Origin: Lepidodermella squamata
Taxonomy: Eukaryota > Animalia > Gastrotricha
Reading direction: 5' to 3'
Assembly (NCBI GenBank): GCA_047495785.1
Contig: JBLDXI010000032.1
Coordinates: forward strand, 2,232,001 to 2,296,000
Length of the DNA stretch: 64,000 nucleotides
Numbering within the stretch: the first letter of the stretch is position 1; each line of letters begins with the position of its first letter. Of the stretch, positions 4,878 to 22,000 are shown one piece after another. Both the position numbers and the translations under genes were made by a program. The notes under the pieces are model-generated. The model was not told the origin of the DNA. It did no database searches and saw nothing but the letters and a program-made list of their open reading frames with translations.

Positions 4878-5340
4878 CTACTTGTTTTTCATCTCAAATT
4901 CAAGAAGGGCTCGCTTGATTTTACTGTCCGAAATTCCGCCGTACGTACCGTAAGAAACGTCATCAGTTGATTGCCGTTTTCGAGCTTCTGCGATTTTGTC
5001 GACCTGGGCCGATGGGACAACGCGGTGGCACGGGCGGAAGAGACAGAATGCATTTTTACGCATTATTTGCCCGACAGCGCGAGCGTATCGCCGGCCCTCG
5101 CCCGCCTTAACATCGCTGTTTGCCAACTCGGCCAACTTGGCGTAGGATACAATTTGACCAGCTGGAACTTGTGAGCGTAACGCTTGCCAAATCGAGAGCT
5201 CAAACTCGCTTTCTCCTGAAACATAGCGAAAAGGTGCTATGACTCATTGTAGTGTTTTTTTCATGTTATCACGAATAGAATGGCGGCGGATGAAAAACGC
5301 TGGTATGACCTTTCAACTATGAGAGCTTCCGTGGCGCAAT

Positions 5341-5380
<40 letters not shown>

Positions 5381-5867
5381 GACCCCACCCGGGAGCGATT
5401 ATTTTTCATTTTTTTTCATTTCATTTTATTTATTTTTAGTTTTCGAAGAATTTCAGATGATTACAGCTTTCAGCAATCAGTCTAACCCTGTGCTTTTATC
5501 CCCTAATTTATTTTCGAGAAAAGAAAAAAATATTTCGACTTCTACTGTCTCACCTTTTCGATATTTCTTGCAATAAGGCGGCATTTCTGGTAATTCACGC
5601 GACTTCTCGTAGAATTTTAGAGAGCTAAGCATAGCTGAAGCACTATAAATAAAAAATTATATCTGAAATATTGGTAATTTTCAAGACAAACATTTTGTCA
5701 TTTTCGTCGACAGTATTCTCAACTTTTTCAACCTTGTCGTCCAATTCGACCTTGATTTCATGGAGACCTTCAGAGCAGTAGGCGACATCGACTCGAAGGT
5801 GCGATTCGAGTGATAGCTTCAGAAAATATCTCAACTTCCGTAGTTTGCAAGATATTGCTTTCGACAT
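4878..5867 (-). CDS. MGMT: O6-methylguanine-DNA methyltransferase (3 exons: about 5867-5692, 5642-5554, 5215-4878)
   Basis: FELSIWQALRSQVPAGQIVSYAKLA...ARAVG...PCHRVV active site...YGG...KRALLEFE. Intron phases join into one open frame. Confidence 0.9.
5325..5397 (+). tRNA. tRNA-Asn (GTT)
   Basis: Acceptor stem GCTTCCG/CGGGAGC, A-box TGGCGCAATGG, anticodon loop CTGTTAA, T-loop GGTTCGA, oligo-T Pol III terminator from 5402. Confidence 0.97.
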
Positions 5868-8561: not shown

Positions 8562-9738
8562 ATGCCATTTATCACATTCGAAAAGCCGAATTTGTGGGAT
8601 GAAGCCTGCTACGGTAAGAACTGATGATTTATGAAAATTTAAAGTAAATGAATAAATGAACTCATTTGCAGAGGTTCAGACGGGCAGCCTTGAAATTCCT
8701 CTACCGCCAGGCGGAATTAAATTTAATGCCTCAGTTCATTCGCCGGTATTTGCTGGTTACTCCTACCAGCAAATAAAAGTGAGTGACTCACCACTTATGG
8801 GGCATTTTGACTCGGCCCGCGCTCATCCAAGTACATATGGATATTCGATGGCCGTCATGACGAAAGATGAACCAGCCGCCAACGAATCAACCTCCAATAA
8901 AACAATCTCCCCGCCGAAGCAGATTCCTCCAACGGAATGTAAGTAAACTGATATTCCGTTTAGCGCAGTGCAATTTAGCCGCTGGTGATAATTTTTAGGT
9001 TCAGCGGTTTATTACTTGGTCAACTATGTTTTCCCAACAGTATCGACAGCTCTTGAGGCAATGCTTGTCCAAGCAAAGGCTGAAAAATGCTTCGAGCGTA
9101 AAAGGACACGATTTAATGCGTGTGATTTTCTGACTGAATATCTTTACAAAAACAACCCGTCGATTTCTGAAGAAGAGCGACAAAGAAGAGCAGATGTTTC
9201 GCTATTCGATATTCCGTTCGCTCGCGATTGGCTACAAGAACATCCGCGCAAACCCCTTCCTCTGTCGCTAATTTGGACAGAAGACCAAGCTGCAACAATT
9301 CTACAATCCGGCTGGAGAGGATATCTGGTTGGATTATACAGAAAACACTATTTCCTATATAACAAATTGCTTTTCCTAATTAGTTACGTCGTCAACCTGA
9401 AGTTCAAGAGCTTCGAAAGTGGCAGAGGGAGTGGCGGGAAGAGAATCGACGAGTGCTGGATGGAGAAATAGACAAATTATTTAGTCGAGCTCAAAGTCAA
9501 GCTAGCTCAGCTCAGGTATTTCTACTGATACCCATACTCGTTCTGTTAATACTTAATGTATTTTATACAGTCCCCTCGCAGTCGCCCTCCATCGAAACGC
9601 TTGTCTGCTCAACGGAATCGCAGTGCCAAGCGACAGCAGGTGCAGAGCACAACAAGTACCAGCGGTGGCGTAATCAGCGAAAACGGCAGCGGTAATGCTC
9701 AGCCAAATCCTCAAACACCGCAAACTCCATCACAATAA
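8562..9738 (+). CDS. IQCK: IQ motif-containing protein K
   Basis: YVFP...LEAML..AK..KCFERKRTRFNACDFLTEYLY..NP, LFDIPF, HPRKPLPLSLIWTEDQAATILQSGWRGYL (IQ motif), PEVQELRKWQ. Multi-exon. Confidence 0.88.
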
Positions 9739-10008
9739 GGCCATGGACAGTTGAAGTCTCGCATGCTTTATTTGTGAACACTCATTTTTCATTCATGTTT
9801 TGAGAAAAATATTTTTGATTTGATTTGTGTCACCAGTTAATACTTCGTGGCATCAGCAGATGTGAGAAAATAAAATATGAAAAACATCACAGAATTGCCA
9901 TAATATCAGTCAAAGATTTGCACAAAATAATGACTACCTAATAATAATCTAGCAAGCATGATGGCAGTAGCTATCACATTTCAAGCGGAGGAAAGTTGTC
10001 AAAATGCC

Positions 10009-10599
10009 TCAGTAATGATCGACAAGGTAACGGGCATTGAAAGCAGCACTTCGAAGGCGTTGATCATACAGAAATTTGAAGAATGGATAGGCGACATACT
10101 GAAACCAGTAGGCTCGAATCCCGGACGAAATTCTGATGTTCATCATGGTCCGAGGCTCTTGATGTGGCGACTTGGTTTCGTAAAACCAAATTTTGTACTT
10201 GAGCTGCAGCCAGCTGTCATCGACGAATTCGATCGTGCGCGGAGGATCATAGGTCGCCAGAACATGGACGTAGTAGAAATTACCTGAAATTCATATAAAG
10301 AATTATCCTAGGCCGGAGTCAAATCGAAAATGCTCACCTAAGAGAGGAATGTTGATAGTTTCACGGTATCTTTTGCCCTTTGTTTTCGGGCCTTCTTCAA
10401 CTTCGATGAAACCAGCTACGCCTGGGTACCATTCCGAGAATTTTTCCAAATCACCAATGATATTGAAAGCTTCTTGCTGAGTCTTGGATAACAAGACTTG
10501 CTTCTCAGCAACAACAAGGTCGGAGTTGGTTGAAAAACTGTAGAGCAACGCGAAAACGAGGGCGACAATAGAATACAGAACTAGTCGAACGCTGAGCAT
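10009..10599 (-). CDS. N-terminally anchored SRPBCC/START-like (polyketide cyclase-like) protein, 2 exons (about 10599-10338, 10284-10009)
   Basis: Hydrophobic N-terminus, then EAFNIIGDLEKFSEWYPGV...KGKRYRE...YDPPRTIEF, typical of the SRPBCC fold. One phase-1 GT-AG intron restores the frame to TGA at 10009-10011. Confidence 0.7.
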
Positions 10600-10777
10600 T
10601 TTTATGGCAATTAATTACTTCATAAAAATCTAAAAGCAAAAATAATTTTTGTCACATTTTATTCAAGTTAAAATTGCAAATATTGACTATTTTTGGTGTA
10701 ACACAGCTCGAATAATGGTAATGAATGAGATCACACACGAGATGCTGATAACTTAGTGTCTTTATAGACAATATTTT

Positions 10778-13007
10778 CTACTGAACAATCAAGCGATCAG
10801 CTCCGAATCCACCTTTATTAGCCCGAGTCTGGGCTCCAGCTTGTGCCGCGCCGGCGTTGCTCGCCGAAAGTGGGCTGGTTCGAACTTTGGCCTCTACCAA
10901 CTTCATAATTTCGCGCCATAGACGGACTTGTTTTACAGCCGCTTCACCGCCAGCCCCGCCCAATTCATGCTGCTGCTCGCGGAGAAGTCGACTCAACTGC
11001 TCGGCCTCCCCGATTCGGCGTGACATAATCTCACGGAAACTCTTCTTCCTCTCCTGCGGATCAGCCGACGTCAAACACCGCATTTCATCAGCAATTCGTT
11101 GCTGGTTAACCTCCAGCTGCTGCAAATGCGTGTTGTAATTGTAAAATTTGCCTTGTTCGTTGAGAAGTTGCTCCCGTAGCCGGCCGACCTCTTGTTCCAG
11201 CCGCGCCCAATTGCCAGCAGCACTTGCCGCAGCCGAGTCATAGCCGGTTTTCCGCTCGGCGTGAAGCGCCGACAACTCCTGAACAGCCTGGCGAAGAGGC
11301 CGGACTTCTTTCAGCATCGGCGCTAGAGAAGCTTTCTTCTCAGCGATTCGGGCGTTCAATCGCTTGACCAAATCGGCCATATCTGACAGGGCTTTACCTT
11401 TACCCTCATCGACGTCGGCCTTTTTCGACGAAACAGTCTCGAGACGCTCTTGAGTAGCCCTCGCCCCAGCAACGCCGCGGTTCGATTCAGCCATAGATAG
11501 GTGATTACCCGCGTCGTCATCGCGCTGTTTCAGAATTTCAAGAGTACGAGTCAAAATTCCGAGTTCCGAAATTTGTTCCTGTACTATCGCTCGTTTCGAT
11601 CGGAAATCAGCGTTTTTCACTTTCAGTTTCCCGGCATAAGAGCGGAGTTCTTCCTCGGTACGGCCAACGTATTGTTTAGGCGCTGAGGTTGTGTTAACAG
11701 ATCGTTGCGGCACGTTATCGCCCGCATTAGCATTCGCCTGTTGCGCTTTAGCATTTGACTCGGCTTCCAGCGCAGCAGCTTCCTGGCGCAGTTCGAGGAG
11801 ACGGCTAGCGACAGACTCTCGCTTAGCCGCAACTACGGTCGCCTGTTGTCGGAAAACACTCAACTGCTGCTCCTGTGAATCAGCGGCTAAGCGCTGCTCG
11901 ACCAGCCGGTTTAGATCAGCAGCGGCCTCAGAGACGCGACTTCGAAGTGCGCCGACATCGCTCGCCCCAACAGCCGGTTCATTCGCCATTTGTTGGAGGG
12001 AACGAAGCCTTCGTTTAGCCAGAGTGACTTCTTTCGGCAAGTCATGCTCGGCTAACGCGGCGTTAGCTGCCACGCTTTGTTCCAGCCGGTCTAGGAGCCG
12101 CTGAGCCCCGGCCCCAGCATTAGCTTGCCTAGCCTCGCTCAGCTGTTGACGAGTTCGATGGACCCTTTGCTCGAGATGGGACATTGCAGATCGTAACGTC
12201 GCTTTTTGCTGATTAATCTGCGCTTCTTTGTCTCGTTCTTGACGCACAGCACGGGCTAGTTCAAGCAGTTTCCCAGCTCCCTCAACCCCGGCTCGGTGGT
12301 TATTAGCCTTTTGCTTCAACCGTTCAACACGCCGAGCGACTTGCTCACGTTCTTGCTCCATGTTTTCAATGTCAGTTCGAACCTCCTGGGTACTTTCGCC
12401 AGCCCGTCGAAATTCGTCCAGTTGCGAGTGGATGTCTTTGAAGTCGGCTAGCGCTGATTCATACTCGGCGTTGAGTGCGGCTAATTCGTCGTCTTGCAAA
12501 AGCTCGATTGGCACGTCAATTTTTCGCAGGAAATGGCCGAGATAGGCTCGCGTTTTCACGTCTTGCATGTTTTGGAGCAGCCATTCAAGCAGCGGGTAAA
12601 CGTGAGATTTCTCGCCCAAAACCAAGCCCTGCCGAAAAGCATTCCTAAAATTTCAAAATATTATCAATTTTGGTTATATTAGTTGAAAAATGATCTTACA
12701 TAGCTTCAGGACCATCGACTCCAGCCGGCTGATATCGCAATATCTGCAAAAGTTGCATGACTCGAACAGCAGTTTGCCCGGCATTTTCCTGCCGAATATC
12801 CACCTTATGCTGAAAATAATATATATTTTATCAATTTATTATCAATTATTATAAGAATCATACCCGGGCATCGACTTCACCGATGACATCATTCAAAATT
12901 TGAAGCAGCTGATTATTGTCCAGAGCATCGAAAGTGATCAAATTGTAGCTTTTGTTGAACGGTGGTTTGTTCAAAGCATCAACGATCGAGCGAATCTGCT
13001 CAGACAT
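10778..13007 (-). CDS. IFT81: Intraflagellar transport protein 81
   Basis: [30 protein letters not shown]-terminus, [16 protein letters not shown], long coiled coil, [14 protein letters not shown]-terminal DRLIV. Confidence 0.95.
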
Positions 13008-13273
13008 GATTAAAATGCGTCTAAAATCATTTAAAATACAAGTTATCTACCACCACTTTATTACCACAAGGACAACTGGTGTCGCAAAGACTTGGCTATA
13101 AAGCGGTGTTTCACAATGGCTTCGAAAAAATGATAAAAAAAGTGTCGAGTATTTTGCGTAATAAGCACGTAAATAGCGACCAATACGAATGAGCATAATT
13201 ATTAGTTGGCTAAGCTTCATCATCAACAAAAAATGAGCAGTAGTGAACTTGAGGTAGTTAAAGGTACAGAATA

Positions 13274-15283
13274 TCATCTGTCAGCTATTGCCTCCGCGCT
13301 ACCGCTGACTTGAACATTTCCATCTGCCGCTGATATTGCTTGATTTGGTCCTCCAAAGTAGCTATCATCCGAACATGATCAGCCCGAATACGAGTCAATT
13401 CTCGATTTCTCGATTGTTCTGTAAAAATCAGCAATTTTCACAAGTGCAATGTGGTTTTCTTCAAAAAATGTGCCACGCAAGAAAGCTCGTTTGAGAATTT
13501 AGATTGAGAATCACTCAGTAAAAGGTGAAAAAGTGAAAATGTATAAATTGTCCGCCTGTTAATACGACATTTCTTGATTTCCTTATTTAAATATCAATAA
13601 CAACAGTAAAATTAATATATCCCACAAATATCAATGTGCCTTACCTTCCTGCAGCTGAGTCTTGACTTTCTCCAAAATATCTTCCACATCATCACATCTT
13701 CGCTTTTTGTCATCCATCAATCGGTTAATTGTATTTTGCCGCATATTCAGTTCTCTTCCCAAATCGTTGACCATTTTCCGAGTTGATTCATCAGCTGTGG
13801 CCATTTTAGCATCACAGGCTAACAGCGTAATTCGAGAATCCTCTTCAGCTGCTTTCACCTTGTAACGATATTGCATTTCAATTTCGATGCACCTTTCTTT
13901 TGCTTCGGTCAACTCCCGCTCAATGTCGGTGCGTTCCTTGCAACACTTGCCGTGTTCTTCGCTCAATAGAGCGACTTGTCGCTGTAATTCATCGATTCGA
14001 GACTGTTTAACGTGAATATCGCTACTACATCGTTCGGACAGTTTCGACAGGGCTAGTTCGAGTTTCTCAACTTTCAGCAGCAACTGCTGCTTGACAAATA
14101 AAGCTTCGTCTCTAGCGCACTCAGCAGCAGCTGCCCGACGAATCGCCTCCGATTTTTCCGCTACATCAGTTTGAGTGGAATTAGCGATACTAGTGTGTAG
14201 CTGCTCATACATTGCATCAACATTTCGGTAGTCTCGCTGAAGCTGCTCATATTTCAGGCGCCATTCCGTCAAGTCCAAATTGAGGCGATCATTGTCTGAT
14301 TTACAGGCGTCCAAATCTTGTTGCATGGAATGCCTTGCTCGTTCAACTTCGGCTTGAACTCGCTCTGAACACTCGCGAAGTATTATCGTTAAATTTTTCT
14401 CCGTTTCACGCTCTTTTTCCGCTGCTCTACCCAGCTCGGCACAAACTGAGCTGTGTTCTATGGACAGTTCTGAATACAACTTCTCCGTCTCCTTCAGTTG
14501 CAACAGCAGAGACATGTTCTCGCGATCCAAAGCTTGCATTTTGTTTTGTAAATGTTCTATCAGCTTATGGGCCTGATCTCTCTCATGAGTGACGGCAGTT
14601 GCCTGTTCGAGGGCCATGTCCGCGCACTTTTTCAGTTCGCTAGCCTGAGATCTCGCGTCAGCCAATTCGGAGGCCTGCCTTTTCAAGGCGCCTTCGCAGT
14701 TTAACAAATCGTTCTTCGACTTTTCGAAGGCAGAGCAGCACGTGACAAGGCGTTGCGAGAGCTCGATTATATCATTTTCGCGGTCAACAAGTTGTTCAGA
14801 TTTCTGTTGAAGCTCACAATTAACAGACTGAAGCTGAGCCTTCAGAGCAGAATACATGGATTCCAAGTTTTTAAGCTTTTCCAAAAGTATCTTACAAGGA
14901 TCGTCAGGAGTGATTTGGCGATTCTGTAAGTAGTTAATGACGTCATCGGCTCTATTTCGCTCATTTTGAATATTTGTGCGCAGTTTAATGAGTAGCTCCA
15001 CAACATTTATCACCGTGTTTCCTGCTGATGCGTCAATTTTAAGGAAGCTTGACATTCCTTCTTGAAGTATGACACGCTCTTCATTGGAAAAGCTTTGCAG
15101 CTTGTTGAGAATGTCAAAAAGCTTAGCGAATATAACATGAAACATTTCATTGATTTGAAATGGGTCGATGTCTCCATCGAGATTTCTAACATTGCCGCTT
15201 TCTTCTGCTATGCCTCGACTGGAGCAAATACGCTTGAATTCGTTGAAAAGATTCAGCAACTGACTTGTTTCGCTGTCACCCAT
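13274..15283 (-). CDS. SCLT1: Coiled-coil protein resembling SCLT1 (centriole distal appendage), exons about 15283-13645 and 13418-13274
   Basis: C-terminal half aligns by eye with SCLT1 as I recall it (ECSERVQAEVERAR, AECARDEA, ADESTRKMVNDL...NRL, ILEKVKTQLQEEQSRNREL). Coiled-coil similarity can mislead. Confidence 0.6.
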
Positions 15284-15421
15284 TATCTTCTAAAATTCTA
15301 AGCGCAATTTAATCACTAGAAACAAGAGCAACATTAATTATTAAAATCAAAGTGCTGAGGTAATTTCTTAATGTGAATTTCTTAAGATAGTTTAGCTTTG
15401 GCAACTTTGATACAGCCCTCA

Positions 15422-15436
15422 ATTACCATAGGAAAC
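15422..15436 (-). promoter_or_regulatory. RFX X-box-like element upstream of the SCLT1-IFT81 cluster
   Basis: Minus strand GTTTCC-TAT-GGTAAT, about 140 bp upstream of the SCLT1 ATG. A second half-site GGCAAC lies at about 15400. Confidence 0.55.
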
Positions 15437-16068
15437 GTGAATAGGAACGCAATTACAAACAAATATCAACAGTAACATCTTTCGGGCGTGGCAGAGCCTA
15501 AAGAAGGGATTTCATGCGCAACTTGAGCCAGCCACAAAAGGGATCGAAATTAAAAATGGCAAAATACGCGGTACGAAAACTATTTTCCATTCGCCGGAGC
15601 GGTCTGCTGCGAAAAAACCACTTTTCATTAAACATTATCACGGTCTCAAGCCTCAAGCCAAAAGTCATCACGATCGGTAAGTACTTCGGTTCATCATGGA
15701 AAAAATCCTATAAACATACAAATTTAGCACAAGAAAAACCTGGGGTATTGGATAGAAATTAATAGTACATGGAACATATATTTAAGCAATCGCCGAAAGT
15801 TCCTCTTAAATGCGAGAGCTGGGGACTGAATGGCCAACGGCAACTCAAAACAAGAAACTAAAGACGCGTAAATAACAAATTCTGTCCAATATTTAATATC
15901 TAAAATAATCCATTTACACGCAGAATTACTTTTATTGCCGTGAAAATGTAAAAACTAATGATTATTTTGAAACTCGAGATAACAGCTGATTGGTGCCAGG
16001 TAATCCACGTTGCACATGCACTTGAAAGGTTTTTAAAACCTGGCTGTTTTCTTTCAGGAGAGAGATGC

Positions 16069-16076
16069 TGACGTGG
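16069..16076 (+). promoter_or_regulatory. UPRE (XBP1/ATF6-type) element upstream of PDIA4
   Basis: TGACGTGG in context GCTGACGTGGC, followed by TATAAG. A CCACG and an ATTGG box lie at about 15989-16009. It sits upstream of a canonical UPR target. Confidence 0.6.
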
Positions 16077-16451
16077 CGTTATAAGAAGGGTCTCGAACCT
16101 TGGTAGTTACTTCAAGCTACTTGCCGGGGCTCTCGACCGGCTTATTTATGCCCATCATTAACTCAGTACTTGAAGTTAAATAGCGGGGAATAGCTGAGAG
16201 AATGTTATTACTCTTCTGTCACTTCTTAATTTATTAAACCTGATAGGTGATAGTCTCTCATTGATGTTTAGATTTTTGCTCAGTTGTTAGTTAGTTGTGT
16301 TGATTAGTGATTTTTTCTTGAAACATTAAGAATACTAACCATAGCATTATGCCTGATGTGTGAGAAATGGTAGATAAATTTCATCCTACTGCCTACTGCG
16401 CATTGTTATTCTCTCGATCATCTGATATCTCTATTTAGATCTGATGAAATC

Positions 16452-18476
16452 ATGACTTCATTAAAAAGATTGATAATATTCGCCGCAGTTTTCGCGTCAG
16501 CTTTCAGTGACGAGACTACCCCCACTGTTGAGAAGGGTGTATATGTTTTGACGACAAAGAATTTTGACAGCTTCATTCAGGAGCATCCTTTCGCCTTCGT
16601 TGAATTTTATGCACCTTGGTGTGGTCACTGCAAGGTATGCTTTGAAATTTGAAACTGATGAAATATCCATGTTACATTGATTAAAATTTCAGTCATTGGC
16701 ACCGAAATGGGAGGCTGTGGCAAATCAGATCAAAGATAGGAAGTTCGGAGACAAATCTGTTGTCCTCGCCAAGGTTGATGCCACCGTTGAGACTGAGTTG
16801 GGCACTCGTTTTGAGGTGCAAGGATACCCCACTCTCAAGTGGTTCCGCGACGGACAGGCGAGCGAATTCGATGGCTCTGGCCGCGAGGAGAGCGACCTTA
16901 TTTCCTTCATCGAAGAGCACGCAGACCCCAACTGGCAACCACCAAAGAGCAAAGTCGTCGATCTCACCGGAGCCAACTTCACCGAGTTTATCGAGAATCA
17001 TGACATTTCCTTGGTTGAATTCTACGCACCTTGGTGTGGTCATTGCAAACGTTTGGCACCGGAATACGAGAAGGCTGCCCGTAAGCTCAGCGAGCGCCCA
17101 ACCGGAGCTCCCATTCCTTTGGCTAAGGTCGATGCTACGGCCGCTGAAAACACTGATTTGGCGAAGCAATATGACGTTACTGGCTACCCGACACTGAAAG
17201 TTTTCCGTCAAGGTCGTGTTTTTGATTTCAAGTCAAAGGGGGCTCCGGATGAACATTCGATCGTCGCGTACATGGAAAAGCAAGCGCAACCTGCTAGCTT
17301 GAAGATTGTCGACAAAAACAACTTTAAGAAATCAGTCGAGAGCTCAGTTGAGGATATGGTCGTTGTTGGATTTTTCGAATCTGAGACCGATAAATTCTAC
17401 CAAACCTACATTGAAGCTGCCAACGAAATGCGCGACGATGACTTCAAGTTCTTCCATGTTATTGGCCGTGAGGCATGGAAAGACTACGATGTGTCGAAGC
17501 CTCTAGTCGCTATCTACGTGCCAACTCGTTTCCAGACCAAGTACGAACCTAAGCGCCATGAATTTACCACTGCCGATGCCAAGCGATCGGAAATTGTCGC
17601 TTTCATTCAAGCAAACTCGGTTCCCCTCGTTGGCCATTACAACTCGAATACTCGCGAGAAGAGGTACAACACCAGGCGTCCGCTTTGCCTGTTCTTCTAC
17701 TCGGTCGATTTCTCGCACGAATATCGTGACACCACCCAGATGTGGCGTCGCAAGGTCGCCGATATTGCCAACGACTTCCGTGATATTACCTTCGCTATTG
17801 CCAACGACGAAGAGTTCGAAAGCGTTATGCGCGAAATGGGCCTCGAAGACTCGAGCGAAGAAATCAACGTCGCCTGCTACGATTCTAAGGGTACCAAATT
17901 CCCTCTTGATCCTCCGATGGAGGAATGGAGTGACAAACACGTCCGAAGCTACCTGAACAAGATGAAAAAGGGTCAACTGAAACCTTTCTTCAAATCTCAA
18001 CCCGTCCCGGCGAAGGGCAAGGATAAAGATGGCCAGGTCACTATTGTTGTGGGCAAAACTTTCAACGATATCGTCATGAACTCTGACAAGGATGTCTTGG
18101 TCTTCATTCACGCGCCTTGGTGTGGCCATTGCAAGGTTGGTTTAATCGAAATGCTTATTTCCTTCCTTAATTTTTGTGTCTTGTTTTAAAGAACTTTGCT
18201 CCTGAGTACAAGAAGTTGGCCGAGAAGGTCATCCCGAAGGAAGGCAATAATTTGATTATTGCTAAGATCGACGGTACTGGCAACGACCTTCACCCCAGCT
18301 TTACTGCTACAGGCTTCCCGACCATTTACTTCGCGCCAGCTGGTAGCAAAGAGACCCCACACAAGTATGAAGGCTCTCGTACTGTCGACGACATGATCAC
18401 CTTCATGAAGCAGCACTCGACCAAGGCTTTCATCGCCGACAAGAAAACCGACGATTCGAAGAAAGAAGAGCTGTGA
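16452..18476 (+). CDS. PDIA4: Protein disulfide isomerase A4 (ERp72), 3 exons
   Basis: Signal peptide, three APWCGHCK thioredoxin sites (a0-a-b-b'-a'), C-terminal KEEL. Confidence 0.96.
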
Positions 18477-19052: not shown

Positions 19053-22000
19053 ATGGAACCCACGATTAAACAGCAACACGCTATTGGCGCTTGTGGCTTA
19101 GTGGTGTTCTTCACTTTGTACGGGTAAGGTTGCCGATCATGATTTGAGAAAAGTAATTTAACGCTATTTCGTTTGCAGCGCCTCAGCATCGCTGCTTGTT
19201 TCAATTTTCGTATCGACCCTGGTCATAGTCGTCGGCCTGTTATCGTTCTTTGTCACGTCTTTCATGTTAAGGTGGATTTGACTAATTTTTATCCAATCAC
19301 AAGTTTCGAATGTATGTTTTATTCCAGAATGAATGGAATCGCGTGTCTCCCATCATTTTTCCACCCTGAAACTAAAAAATTACGTTTTCAAATATGGTCT
19401 GGGAAGTACATTCAAGCGTCAAATGACCAAGCGCTTCTGACTTCCCTTACAAAATCGTATTCGCAACTACCCCTGATTCTCGGTGAGCATCGGAAAACGC
19501 CTCTGCCTATCCCAGCCAAAGTTGACGATGCGTTAGAAGGTCAGTGATTATAAAAATTGATTTAATCTAGAATAAATTTCCGATTTCTTAAGAACTGATT
19601 GACGCATTCATCCGGTTTTACATTTGTTCTTGGTACGTCGGCCGAGTAAGCGAGAAGCCTGATTTCATTGAAGAAGTTCGACATTCCCTGGCCTGTGTCT
19701 TGCGATCTCTGTACGAGCTGCTGCTAGATGCGGATATGGCGGGTGTTGTGAGCAACAAAATCGCGCCAATTTTCTTGAAACACCTTTATATCGCAAAAAT
19801 TTATGGGAAGAAGCGAAACGCGCGAAGTGTCTCGGCAGCAAATTTCACGACATCTGAATTATCGCGGCAAATTTTGTCATCCTATTACGCCGGGAAGCGC
19901 GTTCATCCCGCTGCTACTAGCGCCGAAAACGAGGCGTTGTACCTTCGATCGGTTGTCGATATTTTGCTACCGCTTTTATGCCCACCTGAATTGCTGGTTG
20001 TCCCATCGAGTCGATTATTTTTACGTGAAGCTGTCGCCGCAAAATTGCTGTCATTGGTCAATTATTTGGCGAACCCAATTACTGTGAATAAATTACTGTA
20101 TTTATGGGCGAGCCCGGGTCGCAAGTTCCCGGGCAACGTATCAAGTTGGCGATTATTGCTAGCTGACTACGGCTGGCGACGAACTAGAACGACGCCTTTG
20201 CTGTGTTTCTCCCTGCAAGAAATCACCCCGGAACAAAACGCGGCTCCTTCCCAGTTCCACAGTCGACTTTTATACGCGTTTCAACAATTTTTAAGGCGGC
20301 ACGGATCAACCTATCTTGACATCTACATTTTATATCAAGAAATCAGTGAGTTGCCTTTTTTCGAAAATTCCTCCTTAATGAATTATTTTAGCTGTTGAAA
20401 TTATTCCTGTATTTGGCGATGCGCGTCTCTTGGCTTTCGATGCGTCGAAAACAAATCAGTCAGTTCGGAGGAAGCTTTTCAGTAAGATTCATGAGCTGTA
20501 CCGGGCTTATGTCGATCCAAGCGCTCAACGCAGTCCGACTTGTGCCGATATTGCCGATGAGCCGGTCATGGGATCGGATCCTTGTGATAGCGAAGGCGTT
20601 GAACTCGCCGATGCTTGGCGCAGAAGTAACATTTTCTCCTGATTTTCGTTAAATTTTCGCAAATTTAAATGTTGTAGTAAGCTTAGCCGGTCAAGACAGC
20701 CTGGTTGACCCGGATACGGTGACAATTTTCCACCGGATTAAGCAGCACCTGGAAAACCGACTTCAGCCATTGATTTACGAGTTCAATCAAAGCGATTTAG
20801 CCGTGACTGTGTTCAAGAGCATCTCTTCAACCAGTCAGCCACCGGTCCGCGAGGCTCCAACCCGGAAACAGGTCATGGAAAGTTTGACGAAAAGCGCGTA
20901 CAAGTTCAGCGCAACGAACGGCAAATTACTGACCGATTCGAACGGGTCGCTGAATGCTGTCCCGCCGCCTGATGACCAAGACCAGTCGAGTTACCAGCAG
21001 CAGCTATCCGTGCAAACCAGCGGCCATCAGTCGCTGCGAGTGAGTCAAGGAACTCCACCTGCTCGTCAATTGTCGCCGTCTAGCGTTTCAAATGATGGGA
21101 AATGCATTTCGCCGAGTCCGAGTGGTGGCAGTGCGGACACGGCGTACAATTCGTCGGCAATGCAACCATCTTCCTCATCCCTGCTGCAAACTGACATTCC
21201 CGATCTATCAACTTGGCGCGTTTCGATTCCATTCGTCGAGTTCTCGCCGACGAATAAACAGTCGCTAACCGGCTCGCAACAGTCTATTCCGATCTACGTC
21301 GTCTCGGTGAGGCGCGTCGATTTTGTGACCGAAGAAGGAAGTCCTGAAGATGCGGAAAGCGAAGACAATAACCGGTTCTATATGCCAGGAGGTAAAAATT
21401 CGCGTCATAAAATTCTCCTGAAATGTTTGAATTATCCCTCTCAATTTATTTCGCAGCTATATCAAATATAAAGGGTACACTAGTTTTGCTTGAAAAAAAG
21501 CTTTTAACCCTGTCTCGAGGAATGTAGCACGTTTAACTGACAAATATATCTATACTTATTATTTTAGTTGAACCAATACGTAATCAAGACGATGTGTTTC
21601 GTTTGTCTGCTTCATCAGATGAAAATAGAAGGCGCTGTTGGAATGTTCGAAGGTACGTTTTCTCATAAAATTCACAAGCGTGAGTTGCGTGGTAAAGAAA
21701 AAAAAACGAAGCCCGCGGGAGCTTACTTAGATCCGTAACCATGTGCTTTGCCATTCTAATAATCATCAGTTTTAATTTGATTTGGATCAAGGCGTGATTT
21801 GTTGTGCCTAATAACTAATATTGGACTATTTTTTAATCATATAATCACTCGCGTCATCTATCGGTCAACTTTCAATTCACAGTATATTATGTGGGTCAAC
21901 TCAAGTGATTTTATGATTTAAGGGCCAATTAAATACATAATGCTTTGCTTAACTTTCGTTAATAACCTCTCTAACTTGTGTTATTTCAATTTTATTTAAG

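What the first reader, a model, noticed from the sequence alone, without database searches (positions are those of the whole stretch)
10009..15436. Candidate RFX-driven ciliary operon SCLT1 -> IFT81 -> uncharacterised SRPBCC protein
Seen: three co-oriented genes with 266-bp and 178-bp spacers. In each spacer an AATAAA (13062-13057; 10663-10658) lies only about 27-35 nt before a TTTTAG acceptor (13022-13021; 10631-10630) just ahead of the next ATG, so 3'-end cleavage and the acceptor nearly coincide. The best X-box sits upstream of the first gene. IQCK, another cilia-associated gene, converges on the cluster's end. Inference: a functionally coherent ciliary polycistron with unusually short intercistronic spacing (like C. 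elegans SL1-type operons), which nominates the third gene as a new ciliary component.
Basis: partly seen in the sequence, partly recalled or inferred. Interest (0 to 1): 0.82.

Follow-up and report, generated by a model that had tools for sequence, protein, structure and literature searches.

The report
Conserved SCLT1-IFT81-SRPBCC trio, possible operon
Two cilium-building genes (SCLT1-like and IFT81) and a small unknown membrane-anchored SRPBCC-fold gene lie head to tail with very short gaps in a compact, probably rotifer, genome, in the same order as in a distant relative. This is the layout of an animal operon, but co-transcription, the spliced leader, RFX control and a ciliary role for the third gene are all unproven.

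Summary
The three minus-strand genes are real. RNA-like contigs confirm all four introns.

- **Gene 1 (590 aa)** is a divergent SCLT1. In 1.84 billion representatives, the only named hits outside its own family are two SCLT1-like proteins.
- **Gene 2 (706 aa)** is IFT81.
- **Gene 3 (178 aa)** has an N-terminal hydrophobic anchor and an SRPBCC fold. It has no sequence relatives beyond one sister species.

That sister species has saturated synonymous sites but the same order and orientation, gaps of 171 and 173 nt, and an unpaired YTTTAG acceptor 9-19 nt before each ATG (6-30 nt in the window).

However, IFT81 mRNA ends about 40 nt after its stop, roughly 108 nt before the next acceptor, so AATAAA at 10663 is not its poly(A) signal. 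Only the SCLT1-to-IFT81 junction fits "cleavage next to acceptor".

No spliced leader or polycistronic RNA was seen.

The "X-box" is non-canonical, ranks sixth in the window and is not conserved. Still, stand-alone IFT81 genes in four other lineages carry a top-ranked X-box-like site 26-86 nt before the ATG, and this one has none in its spacer.

Verdict: a plausible operon (about 0.5) and a new member of a known kind. The same scan flagged another "ciliary operon" elsewhere in this genome.

The parts
13285..15283 (-). G1: SCLT1-like coiled-coil gene, 590 aa. Exons 15283..13645 and 13418..13285 (stop included), with a 226-nt intron at 13644..13419.
   Evidence: Gene model. The splice joint 13418|13645 is present in X1 contigs. 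A profile search of 1.84e9 representatives hit only Priapulus and Tubulanus SCLT1-like proteins (E 4.5e-5 and 1e-4) plus one unnamed fragment. hhalign gives 96.3% probability, E 1.6e-9 and 1.8e-9.
10778..13007 (-). G2: IFT81, 706 aa. Exons 13007..12864, 12809..12700 and 12644..10778, with introns of 54 and 55 nt.
   Evidence: Pfam IFT81_CH matches at E 3.6e-15 and 3.3e-13. It is 72% identical to P0001 and 35-37% identical to IFT81 of birds and other lineages. Both introns are skipped in X1.
10009..10599 (-). G3: 178-aa protein with an N-terminal hydrophobic anchor or signal and an SRPBCC-type fold. Exons 10599..10338 and 10283..10009, with a 54-nt intron.
   Evidence: Gene model; the intron is skipped in X1. 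It is 67% identical to the relative's orthologue, with dN 0.27 against 0.23 for IFT81. The Atlas model of the orthologue matches bacterial SRPBCC/Polyketide_cyc2 clusters at TM 0.62-0.68 by query and 0.72-0.88 by row for the single-domain clusters. The Pfam Polyketide_cyc2 match is only E 0.02.
15290..15295 (-). Unpaired TTTTAG acceptor 6 nt before the G1 ATG.
   Evidence: X1 has no cover at 15300-15690, and its contig stops at 15271.
13021..13026 (-). Unpaired TTTTAG acceptor 13 nt before the IFT81 ATG.
   Evidence: An inverted joint in X1 puts an RNA 5' terminus at 13019/13020, the first exon base. No leader letters are attached.
10630..10635 (-). Unpaired TTTTAG acceptor 30 nt before the G3 ATG.
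   Evidence: An X1 inverted joint lies at 10625-10627, and there is no cover at 10626-10737.
13057..13062 (-). AATAAA, the likely poly(A) signal of SCLT1, 35 nt before the IFT81 acceptor AG.
   Evidence: It is the only signal-like hexamer in the 277-nt spacer. Arithmetic on the X1 depth bins puts the end of cover near 13050-13060; this step is inference.
10761..10766 (-). TATAAA, the likely poly(A) signal of IFT81, 12 nt after the stop. The mRNA ends near 10738.
   Evidence: An X1 contig begins at 10738 with 7 unaligned letters, and 10626-10737 has no cover. Hexamer list.
10658..10663 (-). It lies in the intercistronic stretch and is not in mature IFT81 mRNA.
   Evidence: X1 depth is zero at 10640 and 10643. 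The depth bins are fully explained without any cover of 10626-10737.
15422..15436 (-). X-box-like site GTTTCC TAT GGTAAT, 139-153 nt before the G1 ATG.
   Evidence: Score 11.8, rank 6 of the window under a half-site PWM with a 1-3 nt spacer. Not conserved in L001.
15392..15405 (-). Second X-box-like site, GTTGCC AA AGCTAA, with one perfect half-site.
   Evidence: Score 9.0-9.2. It is one of 4 sites scoring 9 or more in the 1168-nt intergenic region, against 0.84 expected.
15284..16451 (.). Divergent intergenic region between SCLT1 and a PDI-like gene on the + strand. This is the presumed promoter region of the run.
   Evidence: Pfam Thioredoxin matches on 16452-16652 and 16696-18189. The relative has the same divergent arrangement.
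9016..9738 (+). 3' part of the converging IQ-motif gene. Its 3' end abuts or overlaps the G3 3'UTR.
   Evidence: Pfam IQ motif at E 1.8e-4. One X1 contig runs from G3 past 9700 for a further 197 nt.

Best explanation
This is a conserved, co-oriented cluster of a distal-appendage gene (SCLT1-like), an IFT-B gene (IFT81) and a small membrane-anchored SRPBCC-fold gene. It most likely works as an animal operon.

Proposed mechanism:
- Transcription starts in the divergent intergenic region upstream of SCLT1.
- The precursor is cut and polyadenylated after each cistron. For SCLT1 this is about 230 nt after the stop, at AATAAA 13062. For IFT81 it is about 40 nt after the stop, at TATAAA 10766.
- Each downstream message is capped by trans-splicing of a leader onto the TTTTAG acceptor. 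That acceptor lies about 20-35 nt after the SCLT1 cleavage site and about 108 nt after the IFT81 cleavage site.

Shown: the genes, their identities, the introns, the mature-RNA boundaries, the acceptor motifs and their conservation.

Inferred: co-transcription, leader addition and the promoter position.

RFX input through the X-box-like sites at 15436-15392 is possible, at about 0.3.
For: - Gene models and introns are confirmed by RNA-like contigs.
- The identities are supported: SCLT1-like, IFT81, SRPBCC fold.
- A relative with saturated dS has the same order, with gaps of 171 and 173 nt.
- YTTTAG lies 6-30 nt before the ATG in 6 of 6 genes, against P of about 0.02 each by chance.
- The spacers are otherwise unalignable.
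- Mature RNA is absent just upstream of all three acceptors, and the 5' termini lie 0-4 nt from two of them.
- Only about 20-35 nt separate the SCLT1 3' end from the IFT81 acceptor, which leaves no free room for a promoter.
- Stand-alone IFT81 in four other lineages has a top-ranked X-box-like site 26-86 nt before the ATG (scores 9.3-15.7 against a background of 0.64 per kb). The spacers here and in the relative have none (best scores 4.5, 2.0, 2.9 and 0.9). Four sites scoring 9 or more lie upstream of SCLT1, against 0.84 expected.
- Earlier scan notes report leader addition on other genes of this genome. These are leads only; I did not verify them.
Against: - None of the 29 X1 contigs carries leader letters, and none runs on for 20 or more unlike letters.
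- No contig bridges a spacer.
- The 5' termini at the acceptors without a leader would also fit transcription starts.
- The whole 13.5-kb neighbourhood, including non-operon neighbours, is collinear in the relative, so conserved order is not specific.
- The genome is compact throughout.
- The X-box is non-canonical and is not conserved in the relative.
- A poly(A)-like + strand end at 13156 could mark divergent transcription from an internal IFT81 promoter.
- Published operons are depleted in cell-type-specific genes (PMC12460157).
Confidence: 0.5

Rival explanations
1. The three genes are separate or 'hybrid' transcription units. IFT81 and/or G3 have their own compact promoters inside the upstream gene's 3'UTR or spacer. 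The acceptors serve ordinary trans-splicing of short monocistronic outrons. The cluster is simply inherited synteny in a very compact genome.
For: - No polycistronic RNA or leader was seen.
- The SCLT1 3'UTR is unusually long, about 230 nt against about 40 nt for IFT81.
- Two X1 contigs end at 13156 followed by A9 on the + strand, with GATAAAAAAAG 16-22 nt before. This looks like a short antisense poly(A) RNA of a bidirectional promoter.
- The 108-nt gap before G3 could hold a minimal promoter.
- The whole region is collinear, not only the trio.
- G1, the first gene, has the same acceptor, so an acceptor does not imply a downstream operon position.
Against: - Neither spacer has a conserved block, an X-box-like site or a TATA element in either species.
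- Four stand-alone IFT81 genes keep a proximal X-box-like site, and this one does not.
- Only about 20-35 nt lie between the SCLT1 cleavage site and the IFT81 acceptor.
Confidence: 0.38
2. There is no trans-splicing at these genes. The TTTTAG|A motif is part of an initiator-like core promoter, and the RNA 5' termini at 13019/13020 and 10625-10627 are true transcription starts.
For: - The 5' termini sit 0-4 nt from the motif and carry no extra letters.
- The motif is very uniform in the relative (CTTTAGAT in all three genes).
Against: - The motif equals the 3' splice sites of the four confirmed cis introns, with a pyrimidine tract, an AG and a GATAA-like branch region 17-25 nt upstream.
- The inferred start bases do not follow the pyrimidine-purine rule (from established knowledge).
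- Earlier scan notes report a leader joined at such sites on other genes of this genome (unverified).
Confidence: 0.1
3. Whatever the transcription mode, G3 is a passenger and not a ciliary component. It would be a secreted or membrane-anchored small-molecule or lipid-binding SRPBCC protein that merely sits next to IFT81.
For: - The N-terminal hydrophobic segment (Kyte-Doolittle 2.37 over residues 1-19) has one upstream Arg and an acidic flank. This predicts a signal or type II anchor with the domain outside the cytosol (the topology is inference).
- The nearest structural and feature neighbours are bacterial SRPBCC clusters of the same size, plus one arthropod cluster of hypothetical proteins.
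- G3 is absent next to IFT81 in four other lineages.
- Operon partners in known animals are usually functionally unrelated (PMC12460157).
Against: - G3 is as conserved as IFT81 (dN 0.27 against 0.23).
- It keeps its position and spacing in the relative.
- The contig depth figures are of the same order as for IFT81 in the one RNA run, although such depths cannot rank genes.
Confidence: 0.6

Closest known systems
SL2-type operons of Caenorhabditis elegans and other nematodes
   Same: Co-oriented genes, a gap of about 100 nt between the upstream poly(A) site and the downstream acceptor (IFT81->G3, about 108 nt), an unpaired 3' splice site before each ATG, and one promoter-sized region only upstream of the first gene.
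   Different: No leader, specialised or otherwise, and no polycistronic RNA has been shown here. The contents are two cilium genes rather than mixed housekeeping or germline genes. The lineage is probably rotifer-like, not nematode.
SL1-type operons of C. elegans and the operons of Ciona and Oikopleura, where the poly(A) site abuts the acceptor
   Same: At the SCLT1->IFT81 junction, AATAAA lies 35 nt before the acceptor AG. Cleavage and the acceptor would therefore be about 20-35 nt apart.
   Different: This does not hold for IFT81->G3. The SCLT1 3' end is inferred from depth arithmetic and was not mapped.
Spliced-leader trans-splicing in Rotifera (Pouchkina-Stantcheva and Tunnacliffe 2005; 23-nt leader listed in PMC3795323)
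   Same: A compact genome with short introns and lone acceptors before most ATGs. Other agents of this scan place the genome near rotifers and report leader addition.
   Different: The canonical 23-nt rotifer leader is not encoded in the window. Scan notes describe an unrecognised 30-nt leader candidate. I could not see any leader on these three genes.
RFX/DAF-19 X-box regulon of ciliary genes
   Same: IFT81 is a classical target type. Four stand-alone IFT81 loci fetched here carry a strong X-box-like site 26-86 nt before the ATG. X-box-like sites are enriched upstream of SCLT1 in the window.
   Different: The proposed site has a 3-nt spacer and lacks the terminal C. It ranks sixth in the window and is not conserved in the relative. 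The PWM was written from memory.
SRPBCC (START/Bet v 1-like, Polyketide_cyc2) ligand-binding proteins
   Same: The fold of the G3 orthologue, in the Atlas model, matches bacterial SRPBCC clusters at TM 0.62-0.68 by query and 0.72-0.88 by row for the single-domain clusters.
   Different: No significant sequence-family match. G3 has an N-terminal membrane anchor or signal. Sequence relatives were found only in one sister species.

Membership tests
Spliced-leader-resolved operon | Two or more co-oriented genes with gaps too short for a separate promoter | tested here: met
   Stop-to-ATG gaps are 277 and 178 nt. The gaps from poly(A) site to acceptor are about 20-35 and about 108 nt. The relative has gaps of 171 and 173 nt.
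Spliced-leader-resolved operon | Downstream mRNAs carry a trans-spliced leader at the acceptor | tested here: inconclusive
   RNA boundaries lie at or near the acceptors, but none of the 29 contigs of the only RNA-like run has leader letters. Contigs cannot show absence.
Spliced-leader-resolved operon | A polycistronic precursor spans the intercistronic regions | not testable with these tools
   Only assembled contigs of one run were available, and none bridges a spacer. Nuclear, nascent or long-read RNA is needed.
SL1-type operon (cleavage site adjacent to acceptor) | The upstream poly(A) site lies within a few nt of the downstream trans-splice site | tested here: not met
   IFT81 mRNA ends near 10738, 108 nt before the G3 acceptor. 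The SCLT1->IFT81 junction is compatible but was not mapped.
RFX X-box target | A canonical X-box (two half-sites, usually with a 2-nt spacer) within about 250 nt upstream, conserved in relatives | tested here: inconclusive
   The site at 15436-15422 has a 3-nt spacer and one half-site mismatch, and ranks 6th in 64 kb. Four sites scoring 9 or more lie in 1168 nt against 0.84 expected. The relative's best score is 7.3, at background level.
SCLT1 (sodium channel and clathrin linker 1) | Collinear sequence homology to named SCLT1 proteins that exceeds generic coiled-coil similarity | tested here: met
   There were only 4 hits at E<=1e-3 in 1.84e9 representatives: the gene's own family, two named SCLT1-like proteins (664 and 704 aa) and one unnamed fragment. 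hhalign gives 96.3% over 265 and 225 columns. Atlas features rank SCLT1 clusters 2nd to 5th. No reciprocal search was possible.
IFT81 | N-terminal IFT81 calponin-homology domain followed by a long coiled coil | tested here: met
   PF18383 matches above its cut-off on both exon pieces. Full-length hits to IFT81 proteins.
SRPBCC superfamily | Helix-grip fold with a hydrophobic pocket; a family HMM match | tested here: inconclusive
   The fold is met in the Atlas's own model of the orthologue (pTM 0.73, TM 0.62-0.68). Pfam Polyketide_cyc2 reaches only E 0.02, below its cut-off. There were no NCBIfam or PDB sequence hits. My AlphaFold2 model failed, with pLDDT 33.
IQCK | Orthology to IQ motif containing K | not tested
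   Only a single IQ motif was detected, at E 1.8e-4 here and E 1.3e-3 in the relative.

The most novel reading that the evidence does not exclude
This would be a cilium-dedicated operon in a rotifer-like animal. One RFX-responsive promoter upstream of SCLT1 would drive a distal-appendage gene, an IFT-B gene and a membrane-anchored SRPBCC ligand-binding protein as a single precursor resolved by trans-splicing. IFT81 would have given up the proximal X-box-like site that it keeps in four other lineages fetched here. G3 would be a new, lineage-restricted ciliary or peri-ciliary membrane factor.
Probability: 0.13. Interest if true: 0.75.

Novelty: new member of a known kind. Interest (0 to 1): 0.42.

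Why it matters
Animal operons are usually described as bundles of unrelated, broadly or germline-expressed genes. Finely regulated, cell-type-specific genes are reported to be excluded (PMC12460157). An operon made of two ciliogenesis genes would be a functionally coherent, tissue-specific exception. It would show how a transcription-factor site can be shared by moving genes behind one promoter.

It would also give a testable guilt-by-association lead for an otherwise orphan SRPBCC membrane protein.

As it stands, the solid result is more modest: a correct annotation of a divergent SCLT1, of IFT81 and of a new small protein, with mapped RNA boundaries.

Tried and rejected
- **Leader detection.** The canonical rotifer 23-nt leader is absent from the window. 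Exact look-ups of two intronless window proteins, meant to fetch RNA contigs with 5' ends, found nothing.
- **G1 identity.** Pfam, the word search (only the sister species) and PDB gave nothing. Atlas features were ambiguous among centrosomal coiled-coil families. Only the exhaustive profile search settled it.
- **G3 relatives.** The word search found only the same gene. Pfam, NCBIfam and PDB were blank. Pattern scans of JGI metagenomes and of bacterial and archaeal genomes were blank. AlphaFold2 on a 5-row alignment failed, so no fold search of my own was made. The spliced 178-aa protein has no reference, so it was never submitted whole. The relative's called product includes 17 intron-derived residues.
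- **More relatives for footprinting.** An IFT81 pattern scan of JGI metagenomes was blank.
- **Loose X-box consensus.** It matches 409 places in 64 kb and was rejected as uninformative.
- **The 76-codon ORF in the first spacer (13277-13047).** Rejected as a chance ORF in a T-rich UTR. The spacer is not conserved.
- **Alternative IFT81 acceptor at 12803.** Rejected; RNA uses 12809.

Full report
**What is there**

Reading the minus strand of 9000-16500 and testing splice combinations gives three complete genes.
- G1: 15283..13645 + 13418..13285, 590 aa.
- G2: 13007..12864, 12809..12700, 12644..10778, 706 aa.
- G3: 10599..10338, 10283..10009, 178 aa.

Two sequencing runs hold the stretch. Contigs of run X1 skip exactly the four predicted introns (54, 55, 54 and 226 nt). 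X1 therefore behaves as RNA and confirms the models. I gave read laying 5,991 letters.

**Identities**

- **G2 is IFT81.** Pfam IFT81_CH matches at E 3.6e-15 and 3.3e-13 on two exon pieces. It is 72% identical to a metagenomic protein and 34-37% identical to IFT81 of birds and other lineages.
- **G1 is a fast-evolving SCLT1 orthologue.** Pfam, the word search and PDB left it open, and Atlas features were ambiguous. I therefore spent the exhaustive search on a three-sequence profile. Among 1.84 billion representatives, only four proteins reached E<=1e-3. These were its own family, two proteins named 'sodium channel and clathrin linker 1-like' (Priapulus, 664 aa; Tubulanus, 704 aa) and an unnamed 280-aa fragment. 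hhalign gives 96.3% probability over 265 and 225 collinear columns.
- **G3 has no significant family match**. The Atlas holds a model of the relative's orthologue (pTM 0.73). That model matches bacterial SRPBCC/Polyketide_cyc2 clusters at TM 0.62-0.68 by query and 0.72-0.88 by row for the single-domain clusters. The nearest feature neighbour is an arthropod cluster of 190-aa hypothetical proteins. The first 19 residues are strongly hydrophobic. My own AlphaFold2 run failed (pLDDT 33), so the fold claim rests on the Atlas model.
- **The converging gene** has an IQ motif only. The label 'IQCK' is untested.

**Conservation**

- The 72%-identical IFT81 lies on a 13.5-kb metagenome scaffold (L001). 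Two further samples hold the same species (L002, L003).
- The order there is: PDI-like gene (opposite strand), SCLT1-like (580 aa), IFT81 (696 aa, no introns), G3 (intron at another position), IQ-motif gene (opposite strand), then POLD2 and MGMT. This is exactly the order in the window.
- Amino-acid identities are 44%, 72% and 67% for the three genes. dS is saturated. dN is 0.55, 0.23 and 0.27.
- The spacers (171 and 173 nt) cannot be aligned with those of the window.
- Even so, each of the six genes has a YTTTAG 6-30 nt before its ATG. The motif occurs at 0.63 per kb per strand, so P is about 0.02 per gene.
- The motif equals the acceptors of the confirmed cis introns. The lone acceptors are therefore real signals.
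- The whole scaffold is collinear, so conserved order alone does not single out the trio.
- In four other lineages (L004, L005/6, L007, L008/9), IFT81 stands alone between opposite-strand genes, with no G1 or G3 nearby.

**RNA boundaries**

- X1 has no cover at 15300-15690. Its G1 contig stops at 15271.
- X1 has no cover at 10626-10737. The depth bins are fully accounted for by the listed contigs.
- A contig starts at 10738 with 7 unaligned letters. IFT81 mRNA therefore ends about 40 nt after its stop, 23 nt after TATAAA (10766-10761).
The gap from poly(A) site to acceptor is about 108 nt, which is classical SL2-like spacing and not 'SL1-type'.
- For SCLT1, AATAAA at 13062-13057 is the only signal-like hexamer in the 277-nt spacer. 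My bin arithmetic puts the end of cover near 13050-13060.
- AATAAA also lies 24 nt before the AG of an IFT81 cis intron. G1, which has no upstream gene, has ATTAAA before its own acceptor. Part of this pattern may be A-rich branch-region composition.
- Inverted 'fold-back' joints place RNA 5' termini at 13019/13020 and 10625-10627. These are 0-4 nt from the predicted exon starts (13020 and 10629).
- No contig carries leader letters, and none runs on for 20 or more unlike letters. This neither proves nor refutes trans-splicing.
- Earlier notes of this scan report a leader on other genes of this genome, and an unrecognised 30-nt leader gene array. I could not verify them. The canonical 23-nt rotifer leader (PMC3795323) is not in the window.

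**X-box**

- The loose consensus matches 409 places in 64 kb and is uninformative.
- I wrote a half-site PWM from memory, with a 1-3 nt spacer. The best site in the window is at 20125, inside an ORF.
- The 1168-nt region upstream of SCLT1 holds four sites scoring 9 or more, against 0.84 expected (P about 0.01).
- The relative's 537-nt region has none above background; its best score is 7.3.
- As a positive control, stand-alone IFT81 genes of four lineages each have a site of locus rank 1-4, scoring 9.3-15.7, 26-86 nt before the ATG. Background is 0.64 per kb at a score of 9.3 or more.
- The IFT81 and G3 spacers here and in the relative have nothing (4.5, 2.0, 2.9 and 0.9).
- IFT81 in this lineage thus lacks the proximal site seen in those four other lineages. 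That fits control from upstream of SCLT1 but does not prove it.

**Reading**

- The best explanation (about 0.5) is an operon transcribed from the region upstream of SCLT1 and resolved by cleavage plus trans-splicing.
- The main rival (about 0.38) is separate or hybrid units, with promoters inside the upstream 3'UTRs. One unexplained observation favours it. Two X1 contigs end at 13156 followed by A9 on the + strand, with GATAAAAAAAG just before. This looks like a short antisense poly(A) RNA.
- A pure initiator reading of TTTTAG|A is unlikely (about 0.1).
- Separately from the transcription mode, G3's ciliary role rests on adjacency only. Its signal or anchor suggests a lumenal or extracellular ligand-binding domain, so I rate 'passenger' at about 0.6.

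**Known and new**

- Spliced-leader trans-splicing is established in rotifers, and reviews list operonic transcription there too (PMC3795323; PMC12460157). The mechanism is therefore a known kind.
- A full-text search found no paper linking intraflagellar transport genes to a spliced-leader operon in an animal.
- Operons elsewhere are depleted in finely regulated genes. A proven cilium-specific operon would be a notable member.

Noticed in passing
window 13100-13156 (+ strand end at 13156): Two contigs of the RNA-like run end at 13156 and continue with A9 on the + strand, with GATAAAAAAAG 16-22 nt before. This may be an antisense polyadenylated RNA inside the SCLT1 3'UTR. Several contig variants differ in the lengths of the T-runs at 13125 and 13135.
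   Followed up: partly
window 15868-15858 (-) and L001 1762-1772 (+): The 11-mer CGCGTCTTTAG is shared between otherwise unalignable SCLT1 upstream regions (about 0.2 expected by chance). It ends in an acceptor-like TTTAG. In L001 the X-box-like GTTACTACCATGAAC begins 25 nt after it ends.
   Followed up: partly
window 13419-13644: The SCLT1 intron is 226 nt, while the other three introns here are 54-55 nt. The relative has no intron at this place. The depth bins suggest some residual RNA cover inside it. Without splicing the ORF would end 4 codons later.
   Followed up: no
window 10778-13007 versus L001 3889-5979; window 10284-10337 versus L001 6330-6380: Intron turnover between the two species. 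IFT81 has two introns in the window and none in the relative. G3 has one intron in each species, but at different codons (after codon 87 and after codon 59).
   Followed up: partly
window 9503-10009: One RNA contig runs without a break from the G3 3'UTR into the last exon of the converging IQ-motif gene. The two convergent 3'UTRs therefore abut or overlap.
   Followed up: no
window 10621-10629: The 30-nt G3 5'UTR holds a minimal upstream ORF (ATG AAG TAA) directly after the acceptor.
   Followed up: no
window 5325-5397 (+): A tRNA-Asn(GTT) gene (Rfam 68.7 bits) lies on the + strand, opposite to the minus-strand ORFs of the POLD2-MGMT stretch.
   Followed up: no
L004 7962-7975; L005 7975-7987; L007 6778-6792; L008 4699-4712: Stand-alone IFT81 genes of four unidentified metagenomic lineages each carry a strong X-box-like site 26-86 nt before the ATG. 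This is a useful positive-control set for RFX motif models.
   Followed up: yes
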